From: Chara braunii
Lineage: Eukaryota > Plantae > Charophyceae
Direction: 5' to 3'
DNA: 64,000 nucleotides
Assembly (NCBI GenBank): GCA_003427395.1
Contig: BFEA01000025.1
Location: forward strand, 4,467,668-4,531,667
The position numbers and the translations under genes were made by a program. The notes under the pieces are model-generated. The model did not search any database. It was not told where the DNA came from and saw only the letters and a program-made list of their open reading frames with translations. Positions within the stretch are counted from its first letter, which is position 1, and each line of letters starts with the position of its first letter. Positions 13,571 through 42,120 of this stretch are shown in pieces.

Positions 13571-13643
13571 TGCGGATTTGAACCCGCAATGTCATAACAC
13601 AATGCGCATTTCCAGTCGGTTCTCTAACCATTGAGCTAGTTCC
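13571..13643 (-). mobile_element. tRNA-derived SINE head
   Basis: Minus strand: A box TAGCTCAATGGTTAGAG and B box GGTTCAAATCC. Confidence 0.65.
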
Positions 13644-13714
13644 GGACATCGCCTCCATTACAGGACGGTGGACGCCATGTTGAGCACTTTGTTGACGGTC
13701 ACTCTTCGCTACAA

Positions 13715-13739
13715 GGAATGACTACAAACGTGCAATGCC
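13715..13739 (+). repeat. 25-bp flanking direct repeat (left copy, putative TSD)
   Basis: GGAATGACTACAAACGTGCAATGCC, identical to 35427-35451. Confidence 0.9.
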
Positions 13740-16517
13740 TGTGACGAACTACTTCCCGAACCTGTGCTATCTTTCGTACCCCTTTGATTTGAATTTCTCT
13801 TGTATCATACCGACCTTGCAAGCACCCCGTTTTGTTTTCCTGATTTCGAACGTCGCGTTTTGGGCCCCCATCTTCCGGAAGCTTGTGTGATTCGTCGGTT
13901 CTGGTTTTTCTTTTTGCAATTCGGGAAATGCATAGGAATTTACGCGCGCCTTAGCGAGCGCACTGGGAATCGGGCCCGGCAGTTGAAAATTCGGGATAAG
14001 CGGAACTTCGACGTGTGTGTGTGAATGTTCCCGGTTGCGTTGGGGAAAACTCTCAGAATTTTGTGAGAATACGAATAGGCGTAGGACTTTCTTTTCCCAC
14101 ATCGTCCCTTTCGCGCCCGGATATGGTGATTTCAATTTTGAATTTAGGACATAGGCAAGCTGTAACTGTTTCGGTGCCTTTTTCTTTTTCTTTTTGTTGA
14201 CGGCGCCACGCATACGAAGCTTTCTTCNNNNNNNNNNNNNNNNNNNNNNNNNNNNNNNNNNNNNNNNNNNNNNNNNNNNNNNNNNNNNNNNNNNNNNNNN
14301 NNNNNNNNNNNNNNNNNNNNNNNNNNNNNNNNNNNNNNNNNNNNNNNNNNNNNNNNNNNNNNNNNNNNNNNNNNNNNNNNNNNNNNNNNNNNNNNNNNNN
14401 NNNNNNNNNNNNNNNNNNNNNNNNNNNNNNNNNNNNNNNNNNNNNNNNNNNNNNNNNNNNNNNNNNNNNNNNNNNNNNNNNNNNNNNNNNNNNNNNNNNN
14501 NNNNNNNNNNNNNNNNNNNNNNNNNNNNNNNNNNNATAGGATCTGCCTATTGCGTGACGAATCTGATTGGCGAAGCTCAGAGTCCCGAAGAATCAACATG
14601 GCTTCCGTAGCGCGCTCCTCGCCAACTCTTCTCCTCTTGCTTTTTTTCTTACACCTCGATTTTCCCCCTGCCTTCTCTCTCCCTTGTCCCCCTTCTCGCC
14701 ACTATAAATTCCGCAAACGCGCCCGCAAATCTCTCTTACGTTCTCGACTGCCAAGCCAGCTTCCGGGAAGCAGTGGCCAGGCAAAGTGTTTTGTGCGAGT
14801 CGGAAAGTCCTGTCGGGCTGACGATAGGCTAGCCGGTTGCGCGCTTGATCACCACGACGGACTGTGGGATCCGGGCGAACCGCGTCGAGTTTACGTCGGC
14901 GGGGTGACGATCGCAGTGGTGGGAGTTGGTACGCGACGGCAAGGATTGTCGGTGCGGGTATGAGGATCGATGATTGGAGTTGAGTGGGTGATTGGTCCGG
15001 GGCCATATTGGAATTCACGGCGAATGCGCCTTTGTTGATTGTGGATCTTTATCTCTGGCGTGAGTGTACGGTGGCAATGCCGAACTTCCTCTTCTCGGAT
15101 CTTGTCATCTCCTATCTCTACTGCCCTCCCTCGTCTCTCTCTCTCTTCTATCTTTGAATGACGGTGTGTCTTGAAGCTTGTCCCTCTCATGAATGGGGGT
15201 GAAATTGTGTGCTCTCCCGTGTGAAGGAACTTCTTCCGGAACTCTTCCATTAGTTTCCTGGGTAATCCCCAGATGTCGAGGAGTTGGTCCTCTTGTCTTG
15301 TGAACGGTGGATGTGAGTGTACAACTCCCTCGGTTGATTTCTGGCCTGTGCACCCCTGCCATTTTCGCACCTTCCACAATGAATGCATGTGTGGAGATGC
15401 TTGCCTTTTTGGTGTTGATTAGACGCAACACTCGGCGGGATTTGTTCGAGAATGCAAGAGTGTTTAGATCTGTAGTTCTGAATGTACTGCGCATGCCATC
15501 TGCCTTATGCTGCAACACATCTGCCTTATGCTGCAAGACATCTGCCACCGATCCACGGGGCAACCCCGAGGAACAGGGCGCCTGGGATCAATGTCGTGGT
15601 AGCTTACTAAACCTGAGTCATGGGTCGGTCCCTCAGTTACATGCATGATCAGCTGATGAGTGCTTTCTCTCTCTCTCGTGTCGGAAAAAATTGATTGGTG
15701 GTTGTGCGAGTGTTTTTTTTTATGACGTCTCGGGATTTTTGTAATTGATTGACATGTGGACAGACCAACGCCCTTCGATCGAGCGTCATTCTCCCGTATC
15801 TCCCGCGTCAACGCGACCTTTTCCTAACGACGAGGAAAGGATACGTGTATGGGAGTGGGACGTACGAGAAGTTGTCGCACGGATCGGCGGACGCTATTAC
15901 TTCCCTCCGGAAAATCGTTGTTTAGGGTTCGTAGAGGCTGGGTTTGTCATTATCGATACACACTTTCCACCTTATTCGATATTGTTGCCATTTAACGAGT
16001 TGATCGTCATCCCGTGGGCGGCAGTAGAACCCCACTGGNCTNGCACTCTATGCACCGAGTGCCANCGCTTTGAGCGCTACGAATCCAAGGGTTTCCACTA
16101 CCGCGTACGGAGTGAAGACGAACACAGAGAAAGAGCCACACGACTAAGACCCTCCACGTCGGACTCAGAACTAACTGGTGAGCGACGTCGGGACTTAATA
16201 CGAAGACGAGACACGCGAAGCGTGCCGAAGCCTTTTCGCTCTAAACGAAGAACCGTAGCACGGTGGGAAGTCAGGCAATACTTTTTGGATTGAATTTATA
16301 TTTCTCCCTCCTTTCGCGCCGAACCCTTGCGCGCATTTTGCGACGTGCGAAAAACGGTCGACTTACTCCATCGGACCAACACGGGGGATTTCAGTTTTGT
16401 CTGTGTCCCCTCACTCAATTTCCAAAAATCCTTGGCACACCCCATCTTGCTGTTTTTCTGGGCCTCTTTTTCCGCACCTCTAGCACTCCGAACGAAAGAC
16501 AGCACAGGGCGTGAGGT
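13740..16517 (+). repeat. Left LTR (repeat A1)
   Basis: Near-identical to 32676-35415; begins TGTGACGAAC, ends GTGAGGT; TATA-like CTATAAAT at ~14702. Confidence 0.93.
15745..16293 (+). CDS. LTR-encoded ORF, unknown function
   Basis: 182-codon frame (first ATG 15754), conserved at protein level with 2964-3374. Confidence 0.6.
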   Translation: MIDMWTDQRPSIERHSPVSPASTRPFPNDEERIRVWEWDVREVVARIGGRYYFPPENRCLGFVEAGFVIIDTHFPPYSILLPFNELIVIPWAAVEPHWXXTLCTECXRFERYESKGFHYRVRSEDEHRERATRLRPSTSDSELTGERRRDLIRRRDTRSVPKPFRSKRRTVARWEVRQYFLD

Positions 16518-16530
16518 TGGTATCGGAGCC
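16518..16530 (+). promoter_or_regulatory. Primer-binding site for initiator tRNA-Met
   Basis: TGGTATCGGAGCC vs the plant consensus TGGTATCAGAGCC (one G:U pair), exactly abutting the end of the LTR repeat. Confidence 0.8.
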
Positions 16531-16611
16531 GACACGTGTCGGTTCTGATGATAGTAAGTCGAGCTGGCGAGAGGTAGAAGAAGTCCCCCACCTGCTCGCC
16601 GAGATCGTCCA

Positions 16612-16917
16612 GTGACCAGATCTATATCTGGTGCGGCTATACCAGCTATGCCAATGGTAGACGGTAACAGGGTGATGGTAAGCATTTCTGCCCCCTTCCC
16701 CTTCTTTCCTAACCATACCCACCCCGAAGCTTGGGCGGAAGCTGTCGAAGCTCAAGGATACAGCGCGGGTGATCTTCCCCGCGTTCTTACCTTGCTGCTT
16801 CGTAATACGGTGCATGACTGGTTGCCGCCTGATTTCGTGGATCGATTTCAGACCACGTTGGATAAATCTGGGCGAGATGAGAAATCCGCTCGAGATTTGT
16901 TCAACTTCTTTGATTGA
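16612..16917 (+). CDS. Short gag-like ORF (ATG 16648)
   Basis: HPEAWAEAVEAQGY..PRVLTLLLRNTVHDWL resembles the retrotransposon capsid N-terminal pattern; lies just after the PBS. Confidence 0.4.
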   Translation: MTRSISGAAIPAMPMVDGNRVMVSISAPFPFFPNHTHPEAWAEAVEAQGYSAGDLPRVLTLLLRNTVHDWLPPDFVDRFQTTLDKSGRDEKSARDLFNFFD

Positions 16918-17001
16918 TTGAAAGCAGATTGTGGGGTTGCATATGGGGGAAGGGTGGGAGAAAGACAGTATGGCATGAAGTTTGCCCGGGTCAACCAAAG
17001 G

Positions 17002-17760
17002 CTGGGCCAGTTCCATAAGTTTGGGAAGGCCCAGTGCTATGTTTATTTTGTATTGCCTGGAGAACCAGACAAATCCATAAGTTTGGGTGGTCTGGTTGCT
17101 CTGACTTGTGAGGGCTGAATGTGATTGCTTCTTCAGGCGCCAGTCAAATCCATAAGTTTGGGTGGTCTGGCGACCTTGTTTATTTGGGGTTTTTGACAGT
17201 TTCTTTGGTTTCTGAACGAGGAGGTGAGCATGTCCCATAAGTTTGGGTGGTTTTACCTCTTCCTGCTTTGGTCTAAGAGAAATAACCCAGACTGAGGACC
17301 AAGACATGTTTCATAAGTTTGGGTGGTCTTGGTCCAACGCCTCGCACATGCTAGAACCAGAAGGGTATAACTTTGATATACTTTACTACTACACTATCTA
17401 TGAACAGGCTAGTCAGGCAGGGTTCCATAAGTTTGGGTGGTCTGACTATAGCTTATCACTAACTGAAGAGAGTACTTAATTAAGAATAAACTTGTGGTAC
17501 AAAGGGGCAGGCTGAGTCTTGAGCTGAAGATGATCGGCTCAGCTATATGCTACCTCAAAGGACTAAGGGTAGACGAATTATATAAATCTTGGATACTTAA
17601 ACTGTTTAGGGCGACTAGGATGGCCTAGTCATAAGCCCAAAGAAGAGAAAAGTTGTTGTGCTCTGTGTTTGTGTATACTTCTTGGCTGGGCTAGACATGT
17701 TCCATAAGTTTGGATGGTCTAGCCTTATGCCCTAGGTAAGTTGGGTATAAGGGACAAATC
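17002..17760 (+). repeat. Array of 7-8 RNA hairpins with constant CCA-UAAGUU-UGG apex and variable stems
   Basis: Core at 17013, 17075, 17150, 17235, 17311, 17425, 17702, each flanked by its own inverted repeat. Confidence 0.85.
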
Positions 17761-18014
17761 ATTGAAAGGCTACGAACTATTGTTTGCTAAAGTAACTTGG
17801 GGATGGTGAGAGAGTGCATGTCTGTGGTTTGGCCTGCATGTGACTGAGTGATGCCACTTCTTAGTCTGAGTTTGGATTTTGATAGGTAGTTGTTGTAGTT
17901 TCTCGCCACGTGCTAGAGCCATAGGAGTTAGAGTCATTTCCTGCATTTTTTGGGCTCGTTTTTTTTTTACTTAGACATTTCTGCAGTTATCGGATCCTTT
18001 ATTTATACTTGGTC

Positions 18015-18560
18015 TTGTATAAATCTTGGTAAGCCACTTTCTCTACGGGAAGCGCTGCCGAAATTTCTACAAAATCAAGAAGTTAGTCAAAACTTTGACT
18101 TTTTCAGGATCCGGTCTTGATGACTTCTTTGACTTAGTAAGAATCTGGGGAGCCTCATTTTCTAAAGGAGGTGCTGCCCAAATTCTTACTAATTCAGGAA
18201 GTTAGCCAAAATTGGGCCTTGAAGGGTCAAAGTCATTGTCAGGTCCCAAACTTGGCCTTGTATAAATCTTGGACTAGCACTTTCCCTACGGGAAGCGCTG
18301 CCGAAATTTCTACAAAGCNAAGAGGTTGGTTGAGATTTCNTCGTGACAGGACTTAGACTTTATGTCTAAGTTCAAGTCTGACTTAGTATAGATCTGGGGG
18401 GCTTTCCTCTCTGAAGGAAATGCTACCCAAATTTTTGCTAGGTCAGGGAGTTTGACAAATTTTGACTTTTTGGGATCCAAAGTTTGACTTTTTAGACTAG
18501 TATATTTTCTGCGATGTCACTTTTCCTACGGGAGGCGCTGCCAAAATTTTCCTAAGTTAG
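18015..18560 (+). repeat. ~120-bp degenerate tandem repeat x5 (hairpin + CTGCCGAAATTT motif)
   Basis: Motif at 18055, 18174, 18298, 18423, 18538; two alternating variants. Confidence 0.8.
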
Positions 18561-18975
18561 AGGAGTTAGCCTATATTTGGACAAGTGACGACCTATGTAG
18601 GGGAGGCTACGGCGAGATCCACCTTACGCTGAGTGATATCTAGAGGTGGACCTAAACTTGGTTAGATATGATGGCTCCAGTAAGGTCAGGAGGTGAAGGT
18701 TACTCTCCCTGAGCGCGTAGACTTAGCTTGAGATTGGCCTGGCTTGTATCACAGGTCTCTTTTATCAAGTCGCTTCAGGACGTGGGATGGACTCAGCTTG
18801 ATCCTATTAGGATCACCTTCTGTTATCACAGATAACAGGTCGGTTGCCGACTCGTCGGTTACGACTCAACCTCAACCCACTCTCCTTACTCAACCTAAAG
18901 AGGCTTCAACCCTGGTGATCTTTTCTGTTTTGTTAAGGTTTCACCCGGACTTTTATTGAATGACCATTTAACAAA

Positions 18976-19111
18976 GGTACTGAGTATTTACTTAAGGTTG
19001 GTTGGCTGGAGGTTGGGGCTTGCATGGCTGAGGCAAAGGGTATNGTACTGAGTATTTACTTAAGGTTGGTTGGCTGGAGGTTGGGGCTTGCATGGCTGAG
19101 GCAAAGGGTAT
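18976..19111. repeat. 68-bp tandem duplication
   Basis: ggtactgagtatttacttaagg...gcaaagggtat x2. Confidence 0.9.
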
Positions 19112-20205
19112 GAGCATGGAGATTGGTTGGAGTTGACTCTGTGTAGTGTATGGACTTCTGCTTGACTCTTTGATGTGATTGCAGGTATGTTCTGTGACTG
19201 GGATTATTGGATTGGACTGCCCTGCGATCTTATATATGTGCATGAGGAGACCCACTGTGATTGTGAGATGTGATCGTCACACGTTTATTCCCATGTGTGC
19301 TTATATGTGCATAATGCGTACCTATGTGGGATACTTGCGTGGCCTGAAGAACCCGCATATTGAGGGCTTAATTGGGAATAGGGAGCTAGCAGAAGAGGAA
19401 TGACCCCTCTATTTATATATACGCTTCTGAGGAAATTGTGGTCGGACGTTAGCCCTGAGCCTAGAATACGAAGGTCCTCGCCCAGGACGACCCAGGTCCC
19501 AGGACTAGCTCTGAAAAGGTCCACTTCCGATAAAAGTCGAAGGTACTTTCCTTGTTGGGATTTGTTTTGGTGGAACGATAAAGTTCCAGGCGGAAGGGTC
19601 AGCGTGTCGTTGGGGATACGCCAGACAACTGACCACCGCTTCAAATCCCTTCCTGCCCTAGGGACCGTCTTACCCCGCACCCTTTGGGATACCTCAGGGT
19701 GCAGAAGGCGGTAAAGCCCTCAGGCCGGTTTTGCGCCCGCTAAAGGGTTACCCCCCCCCCGTAGCGCGCACTTCAGCCGACGCCTGAGCATCGGAAGCAA
19801 CCGCATGACTCAGAATAGGCCATTTGGGTATGGGCACCACATAATGCGCCGTCATCGCAGTTACTCACGTAGAGCTGCATAGTGAATTGGTATGCGTGGA
19901 TCCTACGTTCGAGCGATCTTATACTAAACCTCGCGTACGGCAGTTACCGACTTCCACTGCGCAAAGTCATGGGTTGGATACTAAGGGGCTAGGAGTGTGT
20001 CGCGTTGTACGTCCTTTGCGTCGTTCAGTACTTGTGTGCATGTGTGCGTGTGCTTTACTTTTATGTACCTTATAGTGGTGTGCGCGTGGCGTGTGGGATA
20101 CGTCCTAGTCGACCGGCGACGAGCCGCGCTTGGNACNTCAGCCCCCCCAGATGTCGGTTCGCGTGCGGGTCCGATAGAGGCGTAGTACCGCGCGTACCCC
20201 TTATG

Positions 20206-23200
20206 CTACAGCGAACGAGAAACGCCCTCGGCTGGTCCACCTCTGCGATTGCAACTGATCAGCTTTCGTACTGTGGACTGGTAGCTCGGCGGGGATACGC
20301 CCACCGAAGGGAGGTGACAGCTCCCGTAAGATGGAGGTAGTCGTGCCTCGCGTAGGCCCTGTCCTGTCATAGGGGCTCGCGAGAGGTATGGCTGGCGCAC
20401 CCGGCCGGAGCGGCTTATGGAGGCTCCGTGTGTGTACCACAACGAGATGTGTACTCTGACTCCTGCGTGACGCGACCGGGAGGGTCCCGCGCTACCTCTG
20501 AGTGGTGTCGAGCCAATGCGCTCGACATCGGGACGACCCTTTTCGTTAATTCGGTATACCTTTTGGCCTTGGACTTGAGGGCGGCACACGTGTCTCTGCC
20601 CCCTGCTTCGGCAATTTCCGAGTTACCCCGGTAGTCGATACAGGGGAGGTTATTAGTGCGAAGCTGAAAGGGGGTGAACCCCGTGGACTCATGAGGGGTG
20701 GCCCGATGGATTCCGACGATCTGGTACACGATCTCGGGCCACGGACGCGTGTCATGTGCCGCTAAATTCTTGCGAAGGGCGGTTTTAATCATATGGTTGG
20801 CATTTTCGGCCAATCCGTTCAACTGAGACACATGGGGTGCCGTATGTCGGAGCGTGATGCCCCTTCGCTCGAGCAGTTCCTCTACTTCGCCTTTGAATTC
20901 AAACCCATTGTCAGTCAGAATCTCTTCCGTATCTAGATGGGTATAGAGGAACCGATCAATGTACGTGGCTATTTCTGCGGCCTTGCGGGTCTTGCAGGGG
21001 TAGACTTAGATGTACTTGGAAAAATGATCTCTTAATACTAAAAGGATGAATATTCACAGCGGTTTGGGCCTGGTGGCACGTTAATATCTGTTGTGTCCAT
21101 ACTGACTCGCTGGAAGGGGTGTTCTACTTCCGTAGGTACTATCGTGTTCGATCCCCGTATTGGGGCGCGATCCGCAGCACAGACCAGACAGTTGGCGACA
21201 ACGTATTTAACATCATCTCGTATATTGGACCAGAACCATCGGTTCTGGTCTATAGTTGCCTCCGTGACACGTATCGCGAAATGAGCGGCCTGCTCTTCGT
21301 GAGCAGATCGGGTCCAATCATATCTCTGAAATGGATGAGGGACTGTCAGCCACGAACCCGATCCGGCTTCTCCAAATGACTGTTGATCCATCGATAGTCC
21401 CGAGATCTCTCGGTAGCCCTACGTCTGTCGTGTTTGGTGAGGTGTCCCAATGATAATCCCACTAATTTAGCTAATAAAATTTTATCCGTCCAAACCTCCG
21501 CTCGTCAGTATTTCTCGTCATATTCAGGTCCGTCCGTTCGGGCGGCCTCGAATCGAACCTTTGTGGCCCTGTGGGGAGTTTGGTCGTTCTACACAGAGGA
21601 CACCTCCATTCCTTGCTACTTGTCCGATAGCGAACGCAGGCCCCGTGCGCACGATTGACATACGTGGCATATTCTACCCAATCGACAAACTCGGTTTCGA
21701 AAGGATGACAGTCAACCCCATAAGCCCGTGCAATATATGTTCAAAAATAGCAGAATTTGTCGGGGAGGGTGGCAAAGAAAGTGGAGGAGGTGAGAGGGGC
21801 AGAATTAGTAGGAGAATAGGGGTCGCAGAGACGGGTGGGCTAGTCATGATGGCAGAAAGGGAGAGATGAGACTGAATTGTCGAGGGGGGGCAGAACAAAG
21901 AGTGGGCCCCGTGTCACTTACTCCTTCGACAGGATCTCCACCTGGCCGTATAGAGGTCCGTTCTCCTTCTTCGGTTCGTTCCACGGAATCACCTCCTCAT
22001 TCCTTGGAACCTTCTCAGGTCGGTGCAGTCGTGTCAATCCGTCCGCGTTCCCGTGCCTTTCGTGTTTCCGATGACGAATGTCAAAGTCCATGCTCTGCAG
22101 CACCGTTGCCCATCACCCGATCATGCCCGAGTAATCCTTAGATTTCTTCAGGGCTAGCAGAGGCTCATGATCAGTTACCAATGTGAACTTTCGCCCGTAC
22201 AAGTAAGCTCGGAAGTGACTGATTTCCCAAAGAGCCGCGTAGCATTCTCCTGTTGGAGCGGCGTAGTTACGCTTGCAGGTGGGCACCGATTTGGACGCAT
22301 ACTCTACTACGCACTCAAGTCCGCTTGGTCCCACCTGGGCCAGGATCGCCGAAATTGCCTCTGGCTGCCAGTCAGTAATGAGGACAAAAGGTTTTTCGGG
22401 ATCCGGCCTTATAAGGACTGGGGCCGAAATGAGGGCGGCCTTGAGTTCCGAAAACGCTCGATCACACTCCGGCGTCAGATCAACGGCTGGTCCTTTCGCA
22501 GCAGATTTGTGAGGGGTCCCGCAATCGCCGCGAAGCCCTTGATGAACCTTCGGTAGTACGAGGCCAGGCCCAAAAAGGCGCGAACTTGCGTGATAATCGT
22601 AGGCACCGGCGCATCTCTTACAGTTGCCACCTTCTGCGGCTCCGACCTGAGTCCTTGGTCTGTCACCACGTGTCCCAAGAAGGAAATGGTGGTAAGGAAA
22701 AACTGGCACTTCTCGAACGCCACCTTGAAACACGCATCTCGTAACGCATGCAGTGCCCATTCGATGTGTTGCACGTGCCCTTCGTAGGAACTCGAGTACA
22801 CCAGAATGTCATCCATGTATACGATCACGCAGTAGTTCATGATACTCTGCGCCAAACGAGTCTTCCGCACGAAATTCTGGAAGGCCATGTTCATGGCTCG
22901 CTGGAAAGTTGCGGGAGCATTGCAGATGCCCATCGGACATCGAATCCACTGCCACGTAGCTTCGAAGAGTACGAACGCCGTCTTCGGGCGATCTTCTTCT
23001 CGAACGAGAAGATGATGGAACCCATGGCGAACGTCAAACTTGCTGAAAAATCGATCACTCCCAATCGCATCCAACAACTTGTCAATCCGGGCGAGAGGGT
23101 ATACATCCTTGATCGTGATATCATTCAACTTTCGATAATCGATGCAAATGCGAATACCTCCGGCCTTTTTAGGCACAATCACTACGGGGAAAGACCATGG

Positions 23201-25191: not shown

Positions 25192-28100
25192 CTATAGGGG
25201 GATATGCAAACATGGGTGTAGTGGGAGTATATAGACAGAAAGAAGTTACCTGATGGTTCCCTGCCTCCAGATACTCGCCTAGGTTCCGGCAGAGCTCCCG
25301 CAATCGGTGGGAGGACTCCCCACAGAGTCTTGTTGCGGTCCTACGGGTTGCAATCCCGCCTGCCGCCTTCCCCTCGTAACCAATTGACTAGACTTGGAGT
25401 AAGAAAGGCAGATAGAGAAGGTTTAGAGACTCTTAGAGGGGTGCACTCAGACTCGCGTGAACCCAACCCCCTGACGATCCCCTAATTCGCAGCACTAGGC
25501 CCCTATTTGTCCGGTCCGATCACCTCTCCAAGTCTTGATACCTCCCCTCAGTCCAATCGCGGCCGCCTAGCAGCCTCTAACAGACCATGATAGCCAGCGG
25601 CAGTGTGCAGCAGCATACAGCGGTCAATGGCAAACAGCAGCAGCTAACCGCAACAGCAGATTGTACACAGCCCCTAGATGCAGCAGCTTGCAGCGGCGGC
25701 TAGCAGCGGCTCGCCCATAGTCAACAGTTAGCAGCAATCTGCAGCCACATGCCGTAACTAGCCACCGCAGCCCGCACGCAGCAGCAGTACCCCGTCACGA
25801 GGGAGAACAGTAGCGGTGCACAGCAGTAGTGCACAGCGAGGGACTGCGCCCTGCCACACGGGGTGTACAACAGTTCGGTATCGCAGACGTTCACCAGGGA
25901 CACGGCAACGTACAGCAGCAAGGCATGGCAAGGCGCTCAATAAGGTACATCACAGGTGGCGACCCCCTTCCAAGAGCCAACTTCGTCGGTCACAGCATCT
26001 GACCACCGGTGGTCAAGGGGGACCTGACAACCNCTCCCCAAATCGTAGCAACANCNGTCTGTGCCCGCCAGCATATGCCCTTAGCGCTGAGGACTGGCNT
26101 CCGTGTCGTAGAACAGCCCGAATCACTGTAACAGGCTGCTTCTCATCTCAGTCGTACTAGCAACTCCCAGTCCCTCACTCCAATACCAGGCNACTACCAT
26201 GCTGCAGCCCAGCAACAACAACTCACAGATTTGTAGCAGCAGCGNTAGCCAGCAGCCTCCCTTGCAGCCTGGTCACTTTCCTNATACTACACCTTCGCTG
26301 CCCAATATGAGGCTGCAGCCCTGCCGTCCAAACAGTCATCGTACTCAGAACAGNGCAGCGGCCTGCTCNAGCCCANCGTCCGCTGCTACAGAGAATACAG
26401 TCACAACGAGTAGCCTGGCACGCAATAGAGCTGCAAAAAGGCGTCACCNCANCCAGGGTGTACAGTGAACCGCCGCAGTGGCCCAGGCTCAGTGAGACAG
26501 TGCAACAGCTCTCGAGGGAAAACAGCATCCGGATGCCTGGGAGACACAGTTTCTTCACGGGCCCATAGCGAAAATACTGTAGTGACTGTGCTCAGTCATT
26601 AACCGCTGTACACAACGAGGTCCAGCCACACCTGCCAATGGTGAAACCCATCCAGGGCTGTACAGACCCACTACAGTATACCAGCAACCGACTCCCTCAC
26701 GCCGCTGTCAATGGCCAGACACGTACTACAACCGTTTAAACTAGGGGCTTACACAATCTACAGGTAAGCTGTCTGAATACCTTTTTCTACCACCTCTATT
26801 GACCCGCAGTATTAGTTGTAGGACAAGCCCAATAGCAAACAAAAAGTGTTTCAACAGCAAGCAGTAAGTGCAACAGCGACCGGATTATATACATATATTA
26901 GCTGTGTAGACTCCGATTAAGCTCCCTACCGAATCTGTAGGCTACATCAGATTCGCCTCACGGGTACGGCCAGGTGCACTCTCCTGGAACCCACAATTTT
27001 AAGATCAGGCTGAGGACGGCCAGCACCAGACTCCTGACCTCCCAAAGTAACCGCTCAACTACCGCAGGGTGTTGGCTCAGTGGTAGCAATACAACTCGGG
27101 TCCGGACCCGCAGTCCCCAGCACCAGCCTGTCGGCAAGAACAACCCCTCCTAGTGGTCTCCTGGCCAACAGAAGGCGCAACAGCAACTGAAAATATAGTA
27201 GCAATGCAGCAGCGCACGGGAGTGGCCTTGAAATACAGGGTGACACCAGCCCTCCCTTACCACAGCAACAGCAACCTGCCGGTCACCACCGTCTGAGAAC
27301 TCAGCAACAGCACCCAAGCTACATCAGTGCCATACCCCAAACCACCGGCACTAGCTCCTTTATTGTAAAAACTAGCAACGAACACTTTCCAGGCACAACA
27401 GCCAAAGAAGTTGTTCCAACTCCCACACCCGNTCACCAATCCCAGTAGCTTAAGCCCATAGCAACTGCCTGGCGTAGTAGCCTATAGTAACGGCAGCGCC
27501 AGACCGAGAGTGCACTGCAGTAAGTGCAGCAAACAGCGATCGCTGTCCAACAGCCAGCAGTGTGGGATGGAAATAGCCAATCGTCGTTGGAACTGTGGGC
27601 TCAACGATGTGCACAGTGACCTACAACGGGATTCGTCAACCACTCGTGTACAGCAAACATGTATGGCAACCACAGCCACGCCCCGTGCTCAGCAAAGTGT
27701 ACCAGAAGCGCAATAAGGCTGACACCTTGATTTAGCAGCAAAAACACAGTAGATGCTGCCTGTGGCTTGCTGTCTTGTCCGTTTCCTATTCATGTACCTT
27801 GTAGTAGCCCGCAGTCACCTGAATGCACCTGGCCATCAACCTAGCCAGGTTCAGCCGGAATCAGTGAAGACGACCACCCTGATGGAGCAGAGCACCCCTA
27901 CGTCGAACAGCCATTGATTATAGGCAGCGCGGGGGCTATTCACGACGTCCTCCCGCTACAACACCTTGATAGCCAGCCGACCATAGCCATGATGGCGAAG
28001 GCTGTGACGACTTTATCAATAAGCATGATGCCAATGTTGGTGAGGGAGACCAGTGGCCACCTCTGCAGCGGTGACCCACACAGCGACAACGATGCCAGTA

Positions 28101-29286
28101 CTTGCTACAACAGTCAGGGCCATAAGCCGTTGGAAAAACGAGTATGAATCTCCCGCTAGAATGCGAAAAGGTACACACTCCTCATATCTTATTTTCTCCC
28201 ACGCAGCCCTCCATCATCGTGACGCCCCATCTGTTACTCACGGCCCCGAACGGACGTCGCCATCACACCCGCAAAGCCCCAAAACCCCTGTTTAGAATCC
28301 TCCCTCGCTCGATTTCGTCAAGGAACGAGCGAGATATGTACTTTTCCATTCCCCTTCTTCTTCACCTCTTCCACCTCCGCGCAGCTACTTTCCCTCCTAC
28401 CTCCCCACACAGCACTCTATCGCACAAACTAACTGCACAATCTGACTCGCCCTACCAAAAAAGCCTCAATCTAGTACTTGACTTCGCTCGGTTCCGGTAA
28501 GAGTTGAGTGAGATCTCTAATTTTTCACTCCTCCCTTAGCCCGTTCTCCATACCTCCTCGCACGTCTTTTCCTTCGTATCTTCTATCCCCTCACTTCTTC
28601 CTCCCTTCTGACTTCACCGCTGAGTTCGCCCGGGCCAAGACGTAGGAAATGAGCCTTCATTTGCTCATTTCCATCAAGGAACGACGATTCACAACCATAC
28701 TCATCCTCTTCCCGTCGCTGCTTCCACCATCNCCCGCCCTGAACGCATGGAGACGCTGAAANGGACCGGATTCATTTCTCTTCTTTCCTTTCTTACTAAC
28801 CTCCTTATTTCTGTTCCCCGCCTACCTCATCTTGTTCTTAGCTACTAACCCCTTTCCATGCCCCTTCTTTCACTCGTCTTGCTCGTGCTCCCTTCGTCAT
28901 TGCCTGCGTCGAATGTCTCCTCTCTCTCCGAACGCACCTGGNGGGGNTTCACGTCCAGGTTCGGTCGGTTGTCGCTGGCCTCTAATACTCTGCCGCTGCG
29001 CCCAGTCTCCAGCCTGCTTCTCCCTTATAGTGCATGCACCCGGTACAACTCCGGGTCCGGATTCATAATCACCTCCATATCGCCCTGCTATTCTGCCTCG
29101 CTTCTCTCTCCTTCCCGCAACTAGGCACAGCGCCTCGTAGCCATAGCCCGATCGTGCCTAGTGCAGTTCAACAATCAGGCTCATCCTCTCCCCTTCTCTC
29201 CCCAACAGCGCAGGGCCCGATGGTCTGCCCGGTCGGGAGAGGTGCGTAGCGATCGGCAGCTCACCGTGCCGCACCAAGCCCGGGTG

Positions 29287-29378
29287 TTGGCTTACTCCCC
29301 GACTTTATACGTGTTATCCTAGCACAGGGGCCATGCTAAACTTCTCTGTATCGTCCCAATGTTACCGGATGTCCCGAC
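29287..29378 (-). ncRNA. Diverged U6 snRNA-like sequence inside the LTR element
   Basis: Minus strand GGGACATCCGGTAACATTGGGACGATACAGAGAAGTTTAGCATGGCCCCTGTGCTAGGATAACACGTATAAA; ACAGAGA box and AGC triad intact; no oligo-T terminator. Confidence 0.85.
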
Positions 29379-30754
29379 TGGTGCAGTGTCTGTATTCCCT
29401 CAGTTCAGTGGTGTATCCACTAAATGAGGCTGTTGGCCCTCACGGCCGGCCCCATACGAAAAAAAAACGAAAGAGTAATAATAATAATTAAATAACAAAG
29501 AAAAAAATAAAAATAGGAACCTAAAAAAATCAAAAACAAAAAAACGGTTGAGGGGGAGGAGGACTGCTCTCACTTGGCACTTGGTCCCCGGTCCTGCCTA
29601 CCGGGCCCACTGTCGAACTCCCCAACAAAACTGAGGGGGATAGTCCTGCAGGACCCTCAACCCCTCAGCTCTTCAACACTCCAATGCTCCTGCATTGCCG
29701 CCCATTGGCCTCGATCCCCGTATTTTCGTTGTAACAGTCCAACATTGTAACCTACAGGGCTAAGCCCAAGCCTAGTATTGGTAAGCGCGTTACTCCATAT
29801 GAACAGGTGCGGCGCAGCCCCCAGGCCTCATTCCTGCCTTCCATTAGGCACGCTACCGCTAGGCTCCTACGCCGGCTTGCCCCCCTTGCGCCGTGGCCGC
29901 CCCGCACCCTACTTCGCACGTTAGACTACCAACGGTCTACCAAGGGCACCTCTTATTCCTAGTAGCCAGAGTCAGGCCGACCAACTATGCCGGTTGCATA
30001 ATCCAAAGTAGAAAAATCACACGCGCGCCTTAATCCCGCGCGCCCACACCAGCTCCACTCTAACCAAGCAACTTACCCATGTTACCAAACAGACGGAGCC
30101 GCGTCTCGCACGGTACACTTTAGACCTCTACCCGTACTTCCGGTCACTTGCAAAGGCAAGGGCGGATACCCTTGTCAGGGTATTCGCGCCGACACCGAAG
30201 CTAGCCCGAAAAAGACAGAGGATGACCGATCTGGCTCACGGTAGGCAGGTCCGTAGCTATGAGGCTCGAAATGGAAATGATGGGCCCCAACATCAATATA
30301 AATTAGGGGACCTAGTGCAGCCACGTGGCCACATCTCGGAAATTCGGCAAGTTCGTCATCCACGGCTTAGTACGGATCTTCGGCGTCTGGCGCAGTTCTT
30401 CTGCGACGTGGGTGTGTGTGCAGCTGCCGCGTTTCGATTCGAAGGGAGTCGGCAGGCAGTAGTATTGGCGAAGGTGGTAGCGGTTCATCGGCGAGCGGTT
30501 CCCGGAACGAGCCACGTCACCACGATCGCGACTTTCAGCGGCGACATTAGTACGATCAGCCCACTGTGGCATACCGCGATCTTGACCTCGCTGCGAGCGT
30601 GGACGGAGCAGGTGTCCAACGTATGGCAGCACGGTCTTGCCCGACCAAGGCACAATCTCATCCCGACCTTTGCACCTGATCTTGACGGGGTCCGTCTCTC
30701 TCCGCGCGAGCCAGCGGTCGCGATCCCCACCCCCGTTGCTTTCCCACGCCCCCG

Positions 30755-31741
30755 ATGAACCCCGCCGCCCTCCTCGCCCCTCTCTCCATCTTCGGCCTAC
30801 CCTCTCTTTTCCCTACCTTCTGGCAGTCCGATCTTCATCCTCATCTCTCCCTCTCGATTGAACCCCTTTCCGACCCGCTTCTTAATCCCGGGCATTGGCG
30901 ACTCTGGCGTGAGACCTTTGTTGAGTTGTCCATGTGCTTGGCTCAAGTACGGGTGACGTGGACGCAGACCAGCGAGCATCCGGCGTGGCTCGAAAATCTG
31001 GAACTGCTGATCATACAAGCTTGGAGGACTAACGTGGAGGGTGATCTCCTCGGCTTTCTCTTCGGATCGGTGCGGTCGGGACATCGTCAACTAATTGCTC
31101 AAGAACTCATCGTGCCGATCGTGCAACTGGCGGACGATCTCTCTCCTCACATCGTTTCGCAAAGCGACGACAGCCCCGCTCCGCACATACTCACGCGAAC
31201 GTTGGATCCGTATCTTCAGTGGAGTGCATGCTTGGAAGAGCCTGGGGACGAAGCCTCTCTACCATCGCGGCAGGAGTATCTGAAGCCATACGGCATTATC
31301 AATCACGCTTTCTATCCGAAGGCGGAGGAGGTAGTGATAGAAGAAGAGGGAAGTGACAACGACGGGGAAACATCGGAAGAGGGAAGCTATAGCGAGTATA
31401 GCGAGGGCGAGCAGAGCGAAGAAGAAGAAGAAGAAGAGGAAGAGGAAACAGGGTCTGAGTGGGAAGCCTTGCCGGAGGAAGCGACGCGTACTGGCACGGA
31501 GGCAGAAGATCCTGAGGCAGCACGCAAGCGAGAAGAAATTGCCACCGGGAAACGCCAGCTAGAGTTCGCCAGCGGAGCACGCCTGCACATCGGTGACGAT
31601 CCGACCAGGGATCCGGAGCCGCCGAAGCCCGAAGATGGCGACCCAGCAGCCACCACCCCAAGCACCTCACGGCGGAGATGGAGCCGATCCTCCTCCCCCT
31701 CCGGCCCCACCAGTTCGTCCACGTACCGATGCGGGGGATAG
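30755..31741 (+). CDS. 328-aa accessory ORF with acidic tract, unknown function
   Basis: Uninterrupted ATG-initiated ORF with a globular-looking N half (LIIQAWRTNVEGDLLGFLFG) and poly-E region, ~0.9 kb before the right LTR. Confidence 0.6.
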   Translation: MNPAALLAPLSIFGLPSLFPTFWQSDLHPHLSLSIEPLSDPLLNPGHWRLWRETFVELSMCLAQVRVTWTQTSEHPAWLENLELLIIQAWRTNVEGDLLGFLFGSVRSGHRQLIAQELIVPIVQLADDLSPHIVSQSDDSPAPHILTRTLDPYLQWSACLEEPGDEASLPSRQEYLKPYGIINHAFYPKAEEVVIEEEGSDNDGETSEEGSYSEYSEGEQSEEEEEEEEEETGSEWEALPEEATRTGTEAEDPEAARKREEIATGKRQLEFASGARLHIGDDPTRDPEPPKPEDGDPAATTPSTSRRRWSRSSSPSGPTSSSTYRCGG

Positions 31742-32662
31742 GCCTTCGTCCCCGGACATTATCCCGCCGCCCCCTTGATTACCTCACCCTCGAGCAGATC
31801 CACACCCCCGTCACCTTCCCCCGCCACCCCTTCCATCCCCATCTCTTCCGTGATCTCTACTCTACGCGCCTAATCGCTACCGTATACCCTCACCGCTCCC
31901 TTCAGCCCGCTGCCCCCACGTTCTGTCTACACATCCTGTTGTTCAGCGCTGCGTGGGAGCAGTGCAATGTAGTAGAAGTCTACTGTGTGGCCACGGGAAC
32001 GATCCCCGTTTGTCGCCACTACGATTTCTTTCACGCCTAGCTCTTTCGCACCCTCTCCTCCCTCTACCGCGACTACCTCGCCTCTCTCCCTCATAGCAGC
32101 GATCGCTTCGCTCGTTTTCACCGGATCATTCGCTATGGGGAACTTCCAGTGACAGTAGAAGAATTGAATCGCTACCTACCTCCACTTCCTCCCCGACGTC
32201 CCTGTGGATTTCCCTCCATGTACCGTCTCTACTGGCCCATTCCAATAAGGCGGTAAAACCCAATCGCATGACTATTCCCTCCTCCCCCCCCACCCCCCCT
32301 CTCTTCCTCCCTTCTCCCAATTAACAAGGGAAAAACGGCACGAATCAGCAAGCTTCGCGAAGATCACGCCATCGACGATGACGTCAACCTACGCTCTGAT
32401 TCGACGGACTGCGACGAGCCGGGGTGCAGAGCACACGGAGAACCAGCGGACGATGATGGCGTCACCTGGACGACCTCCGACGATTCCAACTGNACGAGCC
32501 AGTAGACTCACGAAGAGATTGCAATTGAAGTTGGCGTCAACATGAACTCTGGCTCGATTATCTGCTGATACACTTGGTTCCTCATGCATCACTCTTCCCC
32601 CCCTCCTCCTTCCTTCTCCGCCGTGACATACAATCAGGAGAACGCATAATTTTGGAACCCCC

Positions 32663-32682
32663 TGCGCGTCACATATGTGACG
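32663..32682. other. Internal end-to-end junction palindrome (B1-TA-A2)
   Basis: TGCGCGTCACA-TA-TGTGACG; 16-bp perfect palindrome CGTCACATATGTGACG. Confidence 0.9.
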
Positions 32683-35426
32683 AACTACTTCCCGAACCTG
32701 TGCTATCTTTCGTACCCCTTTGATTTGAATTTCTTTTGTATCATACCGACCTTGCAAGCACCCTGTTTTGTTTTCCTGATTTCGAATGCCGCGTTTTTGG
32801 GCCCCCATCTTCCGGAAGCTTGTGTGATTCTTCGGTTCTGCTTTTTCTTTTTGCAATTCGGGAAATGCATAGGAATTTACGCGCGCCTTAGCGAGCGCAT
32901 TGGGAATTGGGCCCGGCAGTTGGAAATTCCAGGATAAGCGGAACTTCGACGTGTCCTTTTTGTGTGTGAATGTTCCCGGTTGCGTTGGGGAAAACTCTCG
33001 GAATTTTGTGAGAATACGAATAGGCGTAGGACTTTCTTTTCCCACATCGTCCCTTTCGCGCGCGGATATGGTGATTTCAATTTTGAATTTAGGACATAGG
33101 CAAGCTGTAACTGTTTCGGTGCCTTTTTCTTTTTCTTTTTGTTGACGGCGCCACGCATACGAAGCTTTCTTCTCCCCCCCCCCCCNCCCTGTTTCCCGCA
33201 TCGTTCTCTCCCGCGCCCTTTTCCCCTTTTCATCCTCCCTTCTCGCAACTGTTTTCTCTCTCTCTCTCTCCCGCTCTGATCGGTTGCGCGCCCATTTCCC
33301 TTTCTTGATCATCTGAATCTTGGACCCGTCTTGCGCTACTTCTCGCGCCCTTTTTCCTTTCGCCTTCCGAACGTGAATCGGAAGCCCNGTCGATCCTTCG
33401 ATCACTCTCGCCCACCAATCAGACGAGTGGTACGATAGGATCTGCCTATTGCGTGACGAATCTGATTGGCGAAGCTCAGAGTCCCGAAGAATCAACATGG
33501 CTTCCGTAGCGCGCTCCTCGCCAACTCTTCTCCTCTTGCTTTTTTTCTTACACCTCGATTTTCCCCCTGCCTTCTCTCTCCCTTGTCCCCCTTCTCGCCA
33601 CTATAAATTTCGCAAACGCGCCCGCAAATCTCTCTTACGTTCTCGACTNCCAAGCCAGCTTNCGGGAAGCAGTGGCCAGGNANAGTGTTTTGTGCGAGTC
33701 GGANAGTCCTGTCGGGCTGACGATAGGCTNNCCGGTTGCGCGCTTGATCACCACGANGGACTGTGGGATCCGGGCGAACCGCGTCGAGTTTACGTCGGCG
33801 GGGTGACGATCGCAGTGGTGGGAGTTNNNACGCGNCGGCANGGATNGTNGGTGCGGGTATGAGGATCGATGATTGGAGTTGAGTGGGTGATTGGNCCGGG
33901 GCCATATTGGAATTCACGGCGAATGCGCCTTTGTTGATTGNGGATCTTTATCTCTGGCGTGAGTGTACGGNGGCAANGCCGAACTTCCTCTTCTCGGATC
34001 TTGTCATCTCCTATCTCTACTGCCCTCCCTCGTCTCTCTCTCTCTTCTATCTTTGAATGACGGTGTGTCTTGAAGCTTGTCCCTCTCATGAATGGGGGTG
34101 AAATTGTGTGCTCTCCCGTGTGAAGGAACTTCTTCCGGAACTCTTCCATTAGTTTCCTGGGTAATCCCCAGATGTCGAGGAGTTGGTCCTCTTGTCTTGT
34201 GAACGGTGGATGTGAGTGTACAACTCCCTCGGTTGATTTCTGGCCTGTGCACCCCTGCCATTTTCGCACCTTCCACAATGAATGCATGTGTGGAGATGCT
34301 TGCCTTTTTGGTGTTGATTAGACGCAACACTCGGCGGGATTTGTTCGAGAATGCAAGAGTGTTTAGATCTGTAGTTCTGAATGTACTGCGCATGCCATCT
34401 GCCTTATGCTGCAACACATCTGCCTTATGCTGCAAGACATCTGCCACCGATCCACGGGGCAACCCCGAGGAACAGGGCGCCTGGGATCAATGTCGTGGTA
34501 GCTTACTAAACCTGAGTCATGGGTCGGTCCCTCAGTTACATGCATGATCAGCTGATGAGTGCTTTCTCTCTCTCTCGTGTCGGAAAAAATTGATTGGTGG
34601 TTGTGCGAGTGTTTTTTTTTATGACGTCTCGGGATTTTTGTAATTGATTGACATGTGGACAGACCAACGCCCTTCGATCGAGCGTCATTCTCCCGTATCT
34701 CCCGCGTCAACGCGACCTTTTCCTAACGACGAGGAAAGGATACGTGTATGGGAGTGGGACGTACGAGAAGTTGTCGCACGGATCGGCGGACGCTATTACT
34801 TCCCTCCGGAAAATCGTTGTTTAGGGTTCGTAGAGGCTGGGTTTGTCATTATCGATACACACTTTCCACCTTATTCGATATTGTTGCCATTTAACGAGTT
34901 GATCGTCATCCCGTGGGCGGCAGTAGAACCCCACTGGNCTNGCACTCTATGCACCGAGTGCCANCGCTTTGAGCGCTACGAATCCAAGGGTTTCCACTAC
35001 CGCGTACGGAGTGAAGACGAACACAGAGAAAGAGCCACACGACTAAGACCCTCCACGTCGGACTCANAACTAACTGGNGAGCGACGTCGGGACTTAATAC
35101 GAAGACGAGACACGCGAAGCGTGCCGAAGCCTTTTCGCTCTAAACGAAGAACCGTAGCACGGTGGGAAGTCAGGCAATACTTTTGGATTGAATTCGTATT
35201 TCTCCCTCCTTTCGCGCTGAACCCTCGCGCGCATTTTGCGATGTGCGAAAAACGGTCGACTTACTCCATCGAACCAACACTGGGGATTTCAGTTCTGTCT
35301 GTGTCCCCACACTCAATTTCCAAAAATCCTTGGCACACCCCATCTTGCTGTTTTTCTGGGGCTCTTTTTCGGCACCTCTAGCACCCCGAACAAAAGACAG
35401 CACAGGCCGTGAGGTTGCGCGTCACA
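32676..35426 (+). repeat. Right LTR (A2) plus 11-bp terminal B2 segment
   Basis: Matches 13740-16517 through GAGGT (35415), then TGCGCGTCACA (35416-35426). Confidence 0.93.
34644..35381 (+). CDS. Second copy of the LTR-encoded ORF
   Basis: Essentially identical to 15745-16293 until a 1-nt indel near its end. Confidence 0.55.
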   Translation: MIDMWTDQRPSIERHSPVSPASTRPFPNDEERIRVWEWDVREVVARIGGRYYFPPENRCLGFVEAGFVIIDTHFPPYSILLPFNELIVIPWAAVEPHWXXTLCTECXRFERYESKGFHYRVRSEDEHRERATRLRPSTSDSXLTXERRRDLIRRRDTRSVPKPFRSKRRTVARWEVRQYFWIEFVFLPPFALNPRAHFAMCEKRSTYSIEPTLGISVLSVSPHSISKNPWHTPSCCFSGALFRHL

Positions 35427-35451
35427 GGAATGACTACAAACGTGCAATGCC
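35427..35451 (+). repeat. 25-bp flanking direct repeat (right copy)
   Basis: Identical to 13715-13739. Confidence 0.9.
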
Positions 35452-38022: not shown

Positions 38023-38082
38023 GTCTTTCGGGACATCCGTTAAAATTTGGCACGATACAGAGAAGAGTCGCATGGCCCCTGT
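38023..38082 (+). pseudogene. 3'-truncated U6 snRNA pseudogene
   Basis: GTCTTTCGGGACATCCGTTAAAATTTGGCACGATACAGAGAAGAGTCGCATGGCCCCTG. Confidence 0.8.
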
Positions 38083-41695: not shown

Positions 41696-42120
41696 GTCTC
41701 TAGCCTCAGGGCTGAGGGCTGAGTCCCTGAGTCCCTGAGGCCCTGAGTTCCTGAGGCCCTGAGGCCAGAGGCCGACGGGTCCTCTATGCTGGCAAAGTCT
41801 GGAAAAGACGACATTTTTGCTGGGAAACTCTGTGGGCCTGGTAAAGCTGCTGTGAAACATATATTTCTGCAAGGGAAACATGGATTCGATGATAAATTTG
41901 CTGTCAAGCTTTCGAAAAGCAATGTTTTTGCAATTTACCCTTGATTGATGGATGTATTCATTGAATGTGATGATTGATTGAAGGGATTGATGGACAAATA
42001 GCAGGTGTAAAGTGAAGAGGAGTGATTGATTGAATGAACTCATTGATTGACTGAATGGATTGTGAGACCAGTTATTGACAAGGAAACTTGGGGGTCTTGT
42101 GTGACCAGATATTGTGAGAA

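What the first reader, a model, noticed from the sequence alone, without database searches (positions are those of the whole stretch)
13715..35451. Exact 25-bp target-site duplication around an LTR-type element
Seen: GGAATGACTACAAACGTGCAATGCC abuts both the TG and the CA terminus. Established: Ty3/Gypsy DDE integrases make 4-6 bp TSDs. Inference: a much wider strand-transfer stagger or a different integration enzyme. The outer parts of the two LTRs differ by several SNPs, suggesting locus-specific assembly, but a k-mer overlap artefact is possible.
Basis: partly seen in the sequence, partly recalled or inferred. Interest (0 to 1): 0.82.

Follow-up and report, generated by a model that had tools for sequence, protein, structure and literature searches.

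The report
25-bp target duplication, Chara retrotransposon
One rearranged Ty3/gypsy-type retrotransposon in the alga Chara braunii really is flanked by an exact 25-bp repeat of host DNA, but its relatives make ordinary 4-bp repeats, so this is most likely a single mis-coordinated insertion by a normal integrase, not a new insertion enzyme.

Summary
The 25-mer occurs exactly twice in the window, at 13715-13739 and 35427-35451. It directly abuts the TG start and CA end of two ~2.75-kb LTRs that differ by about 1% in substitutions. The N gap at 14228-14535 lies inside the left LTR and both its sides are collinear with the right LTR.

The element is a degenerate 21.7-kb Ty3/gypsy-type retrotransposon of Chara braunii (gag-PR-RT-RNaseH-IN, with an H2C2 + rve DDE integrase).

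In 12 other genomic copies the family's target-site duplication is 4 bp: exact in three copies and 3 of 4 in two more. A special enzyme or a family-wide wide stagger is not supported.

The 25-bp duplication is specific to this copy. A second copy (L001) has a 284-bp flank duplication plus an inverted LTR-end fragment, as diverged as its own LTR pair. This matches the uncoordinated or one-ended integration documented for HIV, ASLV and XMRV.

An assembly artefact is less likely. The assembly's unmerged overlaps always touch N; these 25-mers do not.

By-product: every copy has an unexplained A1...B1-TA-A2-B2 end architecture.

The parts
13715..13739 (.). Left copy of the 25-bp flanking duplication
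   Evidence: Exact match. It abuts the LTR start at 13740.
13740..16517 (+). 5' LTR ('A1'). It starts TGTGACG, ends ...GTGAGGT, and contains the N gap 14228-14535. It lacks the terminal CGCGTCACA.
   Evidence: The canonical orientation was set by comparison with loci L001-L012.
16518..16530 (+). Primer-binding site TGGTATCGGAGCC (initiator-Met-tRNA type, judged from general knowledge). It is followed by the 14-nt palindrome CCGACACGTGTCGG.
   Evidence: Conserved in 12 of 12 5' LTR ends.
16531..16903 (+). Start of the internal region and N-terminal gag coding part, collinear with canonical copies.
   Evidence: Gag domains were found in the equivalent L005 ORF.
16904..20527 (.). Foreign block U1. 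It contains tandem repeats and a 67-bp unmerged overlap around N19044, and has no counterpart in other family copies.
20528..25104 (-). PR-RT-RNaseH-IN block, inverted relative to the LTRs and broken into several frames.
   Evidence: Pfam. Inverted alignment to L009, L007 and L005.
25105..30184 (.). Foreign block U2. It contains a U6 snRNA-like sequence at 29283-29390 (-).
30185..32662 (+). 3' internal region, collinear with canonical copies.
32663..32675 (+). B1 (TGCGCGTCACA) plus TA, immediately before the 3' LTR. With the LTR start it forms the palindrome CGTCACA-TA-TGTGACG.
   Evidence: 12 of 12 copies.
32676..35415 (+). 3' LTR ('A2').
35416..35426 (+). B2 (TGCGCGTCACA). This terminal extension is present only on 3' LTRs and supplies the CA end.
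   Evidence: 11 of 11 3' ends.
35427..35451 (.). Right copy of the 25-bp flanking duplication.

Best explanation
The 25-bp repeat is a genuine target-site duplication from one aberrant insertion of an otherwise ordinary Ty3/gypsy-type LTR retrotransposon of Chara braunii.

The family's DDE integrase normally joins the two cDNA ends 4 bp apart. In this event the two intact, correctly processed ends (TG... and ...CA) were joined to opposite target strands about 25 bp apart. Either there were two uncoupled integrase strand transfers, or integrase joined one end and host repair joined the other. Filling the two single-stranded gaps then duplicated 25 bp.

Shown here:
- The duplication exists and abuts intact termini.
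- The family norm is 4 bp.
- The integrase is canonical.
- A second copy carries a long flank duplication of the aberrant-integration type.

Inferred: the joining mechanism. The interior rearrangement (inverted pol block, two foreign blocks) is most simply a set of later events.
For: - Exact 25-mer at both intact termini, none expected by chance.
- Family duplications of 4 bp: L005 TCCT, L008 ACCC, L007 CGCT exact; L009 GCCC/TCCC and L011 TGTG/TATG at 3 of 4.
- No 4-bp duplication can be hidden inside the 25-mer, because it starts GGAA and ends TGCC. The event is therefore non-canonical whatever the earlier state of the target.
- The family encodes gag-PR-RT-RH-IN with H2C2 + rve domains, aligned to PFV and Ty3 integrases.
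- L001 has a 284-bp direct duplication of its right flank, then an inverted piece (101 bp of flank plus 157 bp of LTR end), joined to a 5' LTR that lacks its first base. The duplicates differ by 3-5%, by substitutions only, like that copy's LTR pair at about 4.5%. So the duplication dates from the insertion and is not an assembly echo.
- Published precedent: 1 of 15 XMRV proviruses had a 273-bp duplication, attributed to uncoordinated joining (PMC2857682). HIV and ASLV one-ended integrations give host duplications much larger than 5 bp, inversions and extra viral DNA in either orientation (PMC5041404).
- Both junctions are N-free, and each LTR carries its own variants.
Against: - No raw reads, long reads or empty site could be examined, so the junctions rest on one draft assembly that does contain artefacts.
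- Published aberrant proviruses usually have one truncated or decorated end. Here both ends are perfect.
- No second copy of this window's own LTR subfamily was available. The other copies are only 75-86% identical in the LTR, so the 4-bp norm is extrapolated across subfamilies.
- Only seven copies could be scored at both ends.
Confidence: 0.6

Rival explanations
1. Assembly artefact: the true insertion has a 4-bp duplication, and one of the two 25-mers was created by scaffolding or gap closing of this repeat-rich short-read draft.
For: - The assembly leaves unmerged overlaps. 9 of 133 N runs are flanked by exact duplicates of 12-82 bp, for example window 18977-19043 / N / 19045-19111.
- There are many single N and gaps in and around LTRs.
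- Several copies show local inversions.
- From my own memory, not tested and not known to have been used for this assembly: some gap closers default to 25-mer overlaps.
Against: - All unmerged overlaps found touch an N and are adjacent to each other. The two 25-mers are 21.7 kb apart and the nearest N is hundreds of bases away.
- Both junction sequences must exist in reads for a k-mer or overlap assembler to write them.
- The vegetative plant is haploid (general knowledge), so no empty-site allele should be present to be mixed in.
- L001's long flank duplication is 3-5% diverged by substitutions only, so at least that one is biological.
Confidence: 0.15
2. A real duplication, but not made at integration. 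It would come from a later local rearrangement or repair event: for example replication template switching, a duplication linked to the same events that inverted the interior, or re-insertion of a circular copy by recombination in the 25-mer.
For: This copy is heavily rearranged inside. Inversions near LTR ends recur in the family: L007 and perhaps L004.
Against: The repeat abuts both element termini to the base, with no loss or gain of element sequence. That is what gap repair after strand transfer gives, and an independent rearrangement would match it only by coincidence. The interior inversion leaves both LTRs and flanks in place and cannot create a direct flank repeat.
Confidence: 0.12
3. 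One reading: this element, or its subfamily, uses an integration enzyme or intasome geometry that intrinsically gives duplications of about 25 bp.
For: No second copy of the window's own LTR subfamily was scored. The family does have an unusual, unexplained end architecture.
Against: Five of seven scorable copies have 4-bp or near-4-bp duplications. The window's own pol block is 79-87% identical in DNA to those copies and encodes the same H2C2 and integrase-core sequences. The other outlier has 284 bp, not 25.
Confidence: 0.03

Closest known systems
Uncoordinated or one-ended ('aberrant') retroviral integration (XMRV clone with a 273-bp duplication, PMC2857682; HIV-1/ASLV aberrant proviruses, PMC5041404)
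   Same: A retroviral-type DDE integrase with a fixed short duplication (4 bp here) occasionally gives a provirus flanked by a much longer direct repeat of host DNA. L001 also shows the published hallmarks: one normal end, the other end slightly truncated and joined to extra element DNA in inverted orientation, and a host duplication of hundreds of bp.
   Different: In the window copy both ends are intact and nothing is inserted at either junction. The host is a charophyte alga and the element is an endogenous retrotransposon. No drug, mutant end or mutant integrase is known to be involved.
Ty3/gypsy (Metaviridae) LTR retrotransposons
   Same: LTRs with TG...CA ends, a tRNA-type PBS, the order gag-PR-RT-RNaseH-IN, an H2C2 + rve integrase, and a 4-bp family duplication.
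   Different: - The LTRs are very long (2.75 kb).
- 5' LTRs lack the last 9-11 nt, which 3' LTRs carry.
- The same 11 nt plus TA sits just before the 3' LTR, where a polypurine tract is expected.
- This particular copy has a 25-bp duplication and an inverted pol block.
Split-direct-repeat retroelements (Ngaro/PAT-like, DIRS order)
   Same: The terminal arrangement A1 ... B1-A2-B2, in which an internal junction (B1-A2) mimics the junction of the joined element ends.
   Different: Those elements use a tyrosine recombinase and make no target duplication. This family has a DDE integrase and 4-bp duplications, and B is only 11 nt.
Integrase cleavage of the palindromic LTR-LTR junction of 2-LTR circles (PFV, PMC1180852; HIV-1 in vitro, PMC1905944)
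   Same: The family carries the perfect palindrome CGTCACA-TA-TGTGACG at B1-TA-A2. This is what a joined right end plus left end would look like. Cutting after each CA would give 3'-processed ends.
   Different: This is purely a sequence-based analogy here. No circular DNA or cleavage was observed.

Membership tests
Ty3/gypsy LTR retrotransposon | Two direct long terminal repeats with TG...CA ends | tested here: met
   13740-16519 and 32676-35426, TGTGACG...CGTCACA. Note that the CA end exists only on the 3' LTR.
Ty3/gypsy LTR retrotransposon | Domain order PR-RT-RNaseH-IN with a DDE (rve) integrase | tested here: met
   Pfam on window pieces and on family ORFs. The integrase aligns to PFV and Ty3 integrases.
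Ty3/gypsy LTR retrotransposon | tRNA-complementary PBS next to the 5' LTR | tested here: inconclusive
   TGGTATCGGAGCC is conserved in 12 of 12 copies. Its match to initiator tRNA-Met is from general knowledge; no Chara tRNA was compared.
Ty3/gypsy LTR retrotransposon | Polypurine tract immediately upstream of the 3' LTR | tested here: not met
   The 13 nt before the 3' LTR are TGCGCGTCACA-TA, preceded by CCCCC.
Ty3/gypsy LTR retrotransposon | Target-site duplication of 4-6 bp | tested here: met
   Met for the family: 4 bp in L005, L008 and L007, near-4 bp in L009 and L011. Not met for the window copy (25 bp) or for L001.
Aberrant / uncoordinated retroviral-type integration | Direct host duplication far longer than the family's norm, abutting the element | tested here: met
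   25 bp against a norm of 4 bp. L001 has 284 bp.
Aberrant / uncoordinated retroviral-type integration | One normal end plus one truncated or decorated end | tested here: not met
   In the window copy both ends are intact. The feature is met in L001: the first base of the 5' LTR is missing and an inverted LTR-end fragment is attached.
Aberrant / uncoordinated retroviral-type integration | The pre-insertion site carries the duplicated stretch once | not testable with these tools
   No empty site was available. The 25-mer is absent from about 290 kb of other Chara loci and from the metagenome collection.
Unmerged-overlap assembly artefact | Exact duplicate on the two sides of an N or gap | tested here: not met
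   The 9 such cases all touch N. The 25-mers do not.
Ngaro/PAT/DIRS split-direct-repeat elements | A1...B1-A2-B2 terminal architecture | tested here: met
Ngaro/PAT/DIRS split-direct-repeat elements | Tyrosine recombinase and no target duplication | tested here: not met
   Only an rve integrase was found, and the family makes 4-bp duplications.

The most novel reading that the evidence does not exclude
The family's heritable asymmetry cannot be produced by textbook reverse transcription. 5' LTRs never carry the terminal 11 nt, 3' LTRs always do, and the same 11 nt plus TA always sits before the 3' LTR.

The most novel reading the evidence allows is that the reverse-transcription product is B-TA-LTR at both ends. 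The integration-competent ends would then be made when the DDE integrase cuts the palindromic joined-ends junction (CGTCACA-TA-TGTGACG) of a circular or end-joined cDNA. This route would be error-prone and would account for the long target duplications, 25 bp here and 284 bp in L001.
Probability: 0.15. Interest if true: 0.75.

Novelty: new member of a known kind. Interest (0 to 1): 0.3.

Why it matters
For the finding as given, a long, exact duplication around an otherwise normal LTR element is a natural fossil of uncoordinated integration. That class has mostly been seen in cell culture with drugs or mutant retroviruses. It also warns annotators that pipelines restricting duplications to 4-6 bp will misjudge such copies. 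It does not point to a new enzyme.

The conserved split-repeat end architecture is the part a specialist might want to pursue. If it reflects integration from a joined-ends junction, it bears on the old question of whether LTR-LTR junctions can be integrase substrates in vivo.

Tried and rejected
- I first read the element on the minus strand, because its pol is there. Comparison with other copies showed that the LTRs and PBS define the + strand and that the pol block is inverted.
- I looked for a hidden canonical 4-bp duplication, or a pre-existing tandem repeat, inside the 25-mer. Neither is possible, because it begins GGAA and ends TGCC.
- I looked for the flanks elsewhere to rebuild an empty site. 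Only more distant flank repeats matched; nothing matched within about 90-125 bp of the insertion.
- An exact 25-mer scan of the metagenome collection gave 0 hits.
- I considered finding independent read-level assemblies of the junctions.
- A stretch at 13560-13650 looked tRNA-like by eye, but it was not confirmed by ARAGORN or by Rfam at E<=1.
- Blocks U1 and U2 have no Pfam domains, no LTR-like repeats and no family homology.
- The Chara genome paper is not in the held library, so the assembly method is unknown to me.
- L004's inverted LTR-start fragment gives no 4-bp match with that copy's 3' flank, so it was not counted.
The contig is algal, not human.

Full report
**1. Observation**

The 25-mer of the finding occurs exactly twice in the window, at 13715-13739 and 35427-35451 on the + strand. 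There are no further matches at up to 3 mismatches, and none is expected in shuffles. The left copy runs straight into TGTGACG at 13740. The right copy follows CGTCACA ending at 35426.

These are the outer ends of two long direct repeats, 13740-16519 and 32676-35426, aligned in blocks of 94-99% identity. Counting substitutions only, the pair differs at 27 of about 2470 positions, mostly transitions. So the LTRs are distinct sequences, and a 25-mer without a mutation is expected.

The scan's program asked that the gap be tested first. The N run 14228-14535 lies inside the left LTR, 488 bp from the junction. The sequence before and after it aligns to the right LTR in the same order and strand. 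The right LTR has 262 bp where the gap is written as 308 N. The gap does not affect the claim.

**2. What the element is**

Pfam finds protease, reverse transcriptase, RNase H and the integrase zinc-binding (H2C2) domain on pieces of the minus strand between 20418 and 24702. An adjoining integrase-core-like ORF is also present. The pieces are broken into several frames.

The RT piece is 84-93% identical to many Chara braunii proteins. The contig is therefore from that alga. It is not human, and the element is not a virus of animals, people or crops.

I fetched 12 loci from the C. braunii assembly that carry family copies. In them the canonical layout is:
- 5' LTR
- PBS TGGTATCGGAGCC
- gag (gag domain and zinc knuckle)
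- PR-RT-RNaseH
- IN (H2C2 + rve)
- about 2.5 kb of 3' region
- 3' LTR

The total is about 14 kb, all on one strand. The integrase aligns to PFV and Ty3 integrases over the zinc and catalytic-core domains. No tyrosine recombinase is present. No copy has an intact gag-pol.

**3. This copy is rearranged**

Relative to its own LTRs and PBS, which define the + strand, the window's copy differs from the canonical layout as follows:
- The PR-to-IN block (20528-25104) is inverted.
- About 640 bp of gag is missing.
- Two blocks, 16904-20527 and 25105-30184, have no counterpart in other copies and no recognisable domains.

The breakpoints next to the integrase end share CCGA. The foreign DNA there begins TGTCG and ends CGACA. 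This suggests a nested insertion followed by an inversion, but I could not identify the inserted element. These changes explain the 21.7-kb length. They leave both LTRs and both flanks in place, so they cannot create the flank repeat.

**4. Duplication length in the family**

Seven copies could be scored at both ends:

| Copy | Duplication |
|---|---|
| L005 | TCCT / TCCT, exact |
| L008 | ACCC / ACCC, exact |
| L007 | CGCT / CGCT, exact; its 5' LTR start lies on a locally inverted piece |
| L009 | GCCC / TCCC, 3 of 4 |
| L011 | TGTG / TATG, 3 of 4 |
| Window | 25 bp |
| L001 | 284 bp, complex |

The family norm is therefore 4 bp, inside the 4-6 bp range of retroviral-type integrases. At family level they do.

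The 25-mer cannot contain a hidden 4-bp duplication, because it starts GGAA and ends TGCC. This one event was non-canonical.

**5. The second outlier**

In L001 the 3' LTR end and right flank are normal. To the left of the element lies a direct copy of the first 284 bp of the right flank (96.8% identical). Next comes an inverted copy of the first 101 bp of that flank plus the last 157 bp of the LTR. This is joined to a 5' LTR that lacks its first base.

The duplicated parts differ by substitutions only, at 3-5%. That copy's LTR pair differs by about 4.5%. So they arose about when the element inserted and are not assembler echoes.

This structure is what has been described for aberrant proviruses: one end inserted by integrase, and the other extended on nearby host or viral templates and joined by the host. 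The result is host duplications much larger than the normal repeat, inversions, and extra viral DNA in either orientation (PMC5041404). A 273-bp duplication in 1 of 15 XMRV proviruses was likewise ascribed to uncoordinated joining (PMC2857682).

**6. Mechanism for the window copy**

The best reading is that the two processed ends were joined to opposite target strands about 25 bp apart, and gap repair duplicated the stretch between them. Because both termini are intact and nothing is inserted at either junction, two uncoupled integrase strand transfers fit slightly better than host-mediated joining of one end. The sequence cannot separate the two.

As a pure inference, 25 minus 4 is 21 bp, or two helical turns. 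That would place the second joining site on the same face of the target helix.

**7. Artefact rival**

The assembly does contain one class of artefact. Nine of 133 N runs in the window and loci are flanked by exact unmerged overlaps of 12-82 bp, for example 18977-19043 / N19044 / 19045-19111. One of the nine, at N47996, lies in an 8-bp microsatellite and may be genuine repeat. All nine touch an N and are adjacent to each other.

The two 25-mers are 21.7 kb apart and free of N. For an assembler to write both junctions, reads containing them should exist. A haploid plant gives no empty-site allele to be mixed in. I therefore rate an artefact at about 0.15. It cannot be excluded without reads, and the assembly method could not be checked because the genome paper is not held.

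**8. Unexplained by-product**

- In 12 of 12 5' LTR ends, the LTR runs ...GTGAGGT directly into the PBS.
- In 11 of 11 3' LTR ends, it continues with TGCGCGTCACA. That extension provides the CA terminus.
- In 12 of 12 copies, the same 11 nt plus TA lies immediately before the 3' LTR, where a polypurine tract is expected.

Together with the LTR start, this internal copy forms the perfect palindrome CGTCACA-TA-TGTGACG. The copies are 75-86% identical to the window's LTR, so the arrangement has been inherited through many cycles.

In the textbook scheme, the right end of the cDNA is set by the 5' LTR-PBS boundary, so the terminal 11 nt should be lost in one generation. One model fits. Plus-strand priming upstream of the internal 11-mer gives a cDNA with B-TA-LTR at both ends. 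The ends are joined. Integrase then cuts the palindromic junction after each CA, as reported for PFV and, in vitro, for HIV-1 integrase (PMC1180852, PMC1905944). This is hypothesis only. The arrangement formally resembles the split direct repeats of Ngaro/PAT elements, but those use a tyrosine recombinase and make no duplication.

**9. Verdict**

The finding is a natural example of a known kind of integration error, in an alga. Interest is modest at 0.3. The end architecture is the more unusual lead.

**10. Limits**

- The junctions rest on one draft assembly, with no reads examined.
- Only seven copies could be scored at both ends.
- None of the other copies belongs to the window's own LTR subfamily.

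Noticed in passing
window 16511-16530, 32658-32682, 35409-35426; same positions in L001-L012: Conserved end asymmetry A1...B1-TA-A2-B2. 5' LTRs lack the terminal TGCGCGTCACA and 3' LTRs carry it. The same 11 nt plus TA precedes every 3' LTR and forms a 16-nt palindrome with the LTR start. There is no polypurine tract next to the LTR.
   Followed up: partly
window 16904-30184: The interior of this copy is rearranged. The PR-RT-RH-IN block (20528-25104) is inverted relative to the LTRs, and about 640 bp of gag is missing. Two unrelated blocks of 3.6 and 5.1 kb are present. Their outer ends read TGTCG...CGACA and are flanked by CCGA.
   Followed up: partly
window 29283-29390 (-); also window 38028-38082 and L005 1324-1373: A full-length U6 snRNA match (55 bits) sits inside the foreign block of the element. 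Short U6-like fragments recur elsewhere, suggesting U6-derived repeats or retrocopies.
   Followed up: no
window 18977-19111 (N at 19044) and 47996; L004 3342; L006 2755; L008 5628-5662; L011 20073-20125; L012 2753: Exact duplicates of 12-82 bp on the two sides of N runs. These look like unmerged contig overlaps, an assembly artefact class of this draft. The one at 47996 lies in an 8-bp microsatellite and may be genuine repeat.
   Followed up: yes
L001 4574-5114 and 19095-19378: A 284-bp direct duplication of the right flank, followed by an inverted piece (flank plus LTR end) joined to a 5' LTR lacking its first base. Its divergence equals that of the copy's LTR pair. It looks like a fossil one-ended integration.
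   Followed up: partly
L007 716-4698: The first 747 bp of the 5' LTR, together with about 3.2 kb of left flank, is inverted. The 4-bp duplication CGCT is still recognisable across the inversion. L004 20630-21830 may be a similar case.
   Followed up: partly
L008 3643-3701 and 17843-17860: The target of this copy carries a 35-bp tandem duplication that spans the insertion point. One unit is uninterrupted. The other is split by the element with a normal 4-bp duplication.
   Followed up: partly
window 16529-16542: A perfect 14-nt palindrome CCGACACGTGTCGG overlaps the end of the PBS and is largely conserved across copies, with point changes in several. It may be a dimerisation or structural signal.
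   Followed up: no
window 17000-17722 and 18007-18570: Two arrays of degenerate tandem repeats inside block U1: units carrying CCATAAGTTTGGGTGGTCTGG, and units of about 120 bp.
   Followed up: no
window 13115-13276 and L004 21870-22194: The same dispersed repeat lies upstream of an LTR start in two loci, 464 bp away in the window and about 40 bp away in L004. The stretch at window 13439-13614, which looked tRNA-like by eye, matches L008 2637-2817 at 73% but is not recognised as a tRNA.
   Followed up: partly
window 41502-42401: Tandem repeats of about 95 bp and about 110 bp. The adjoining 2-kb bin 42001-44000 has a very strong GC skew (0.405). Not examined.
   Followed up: no
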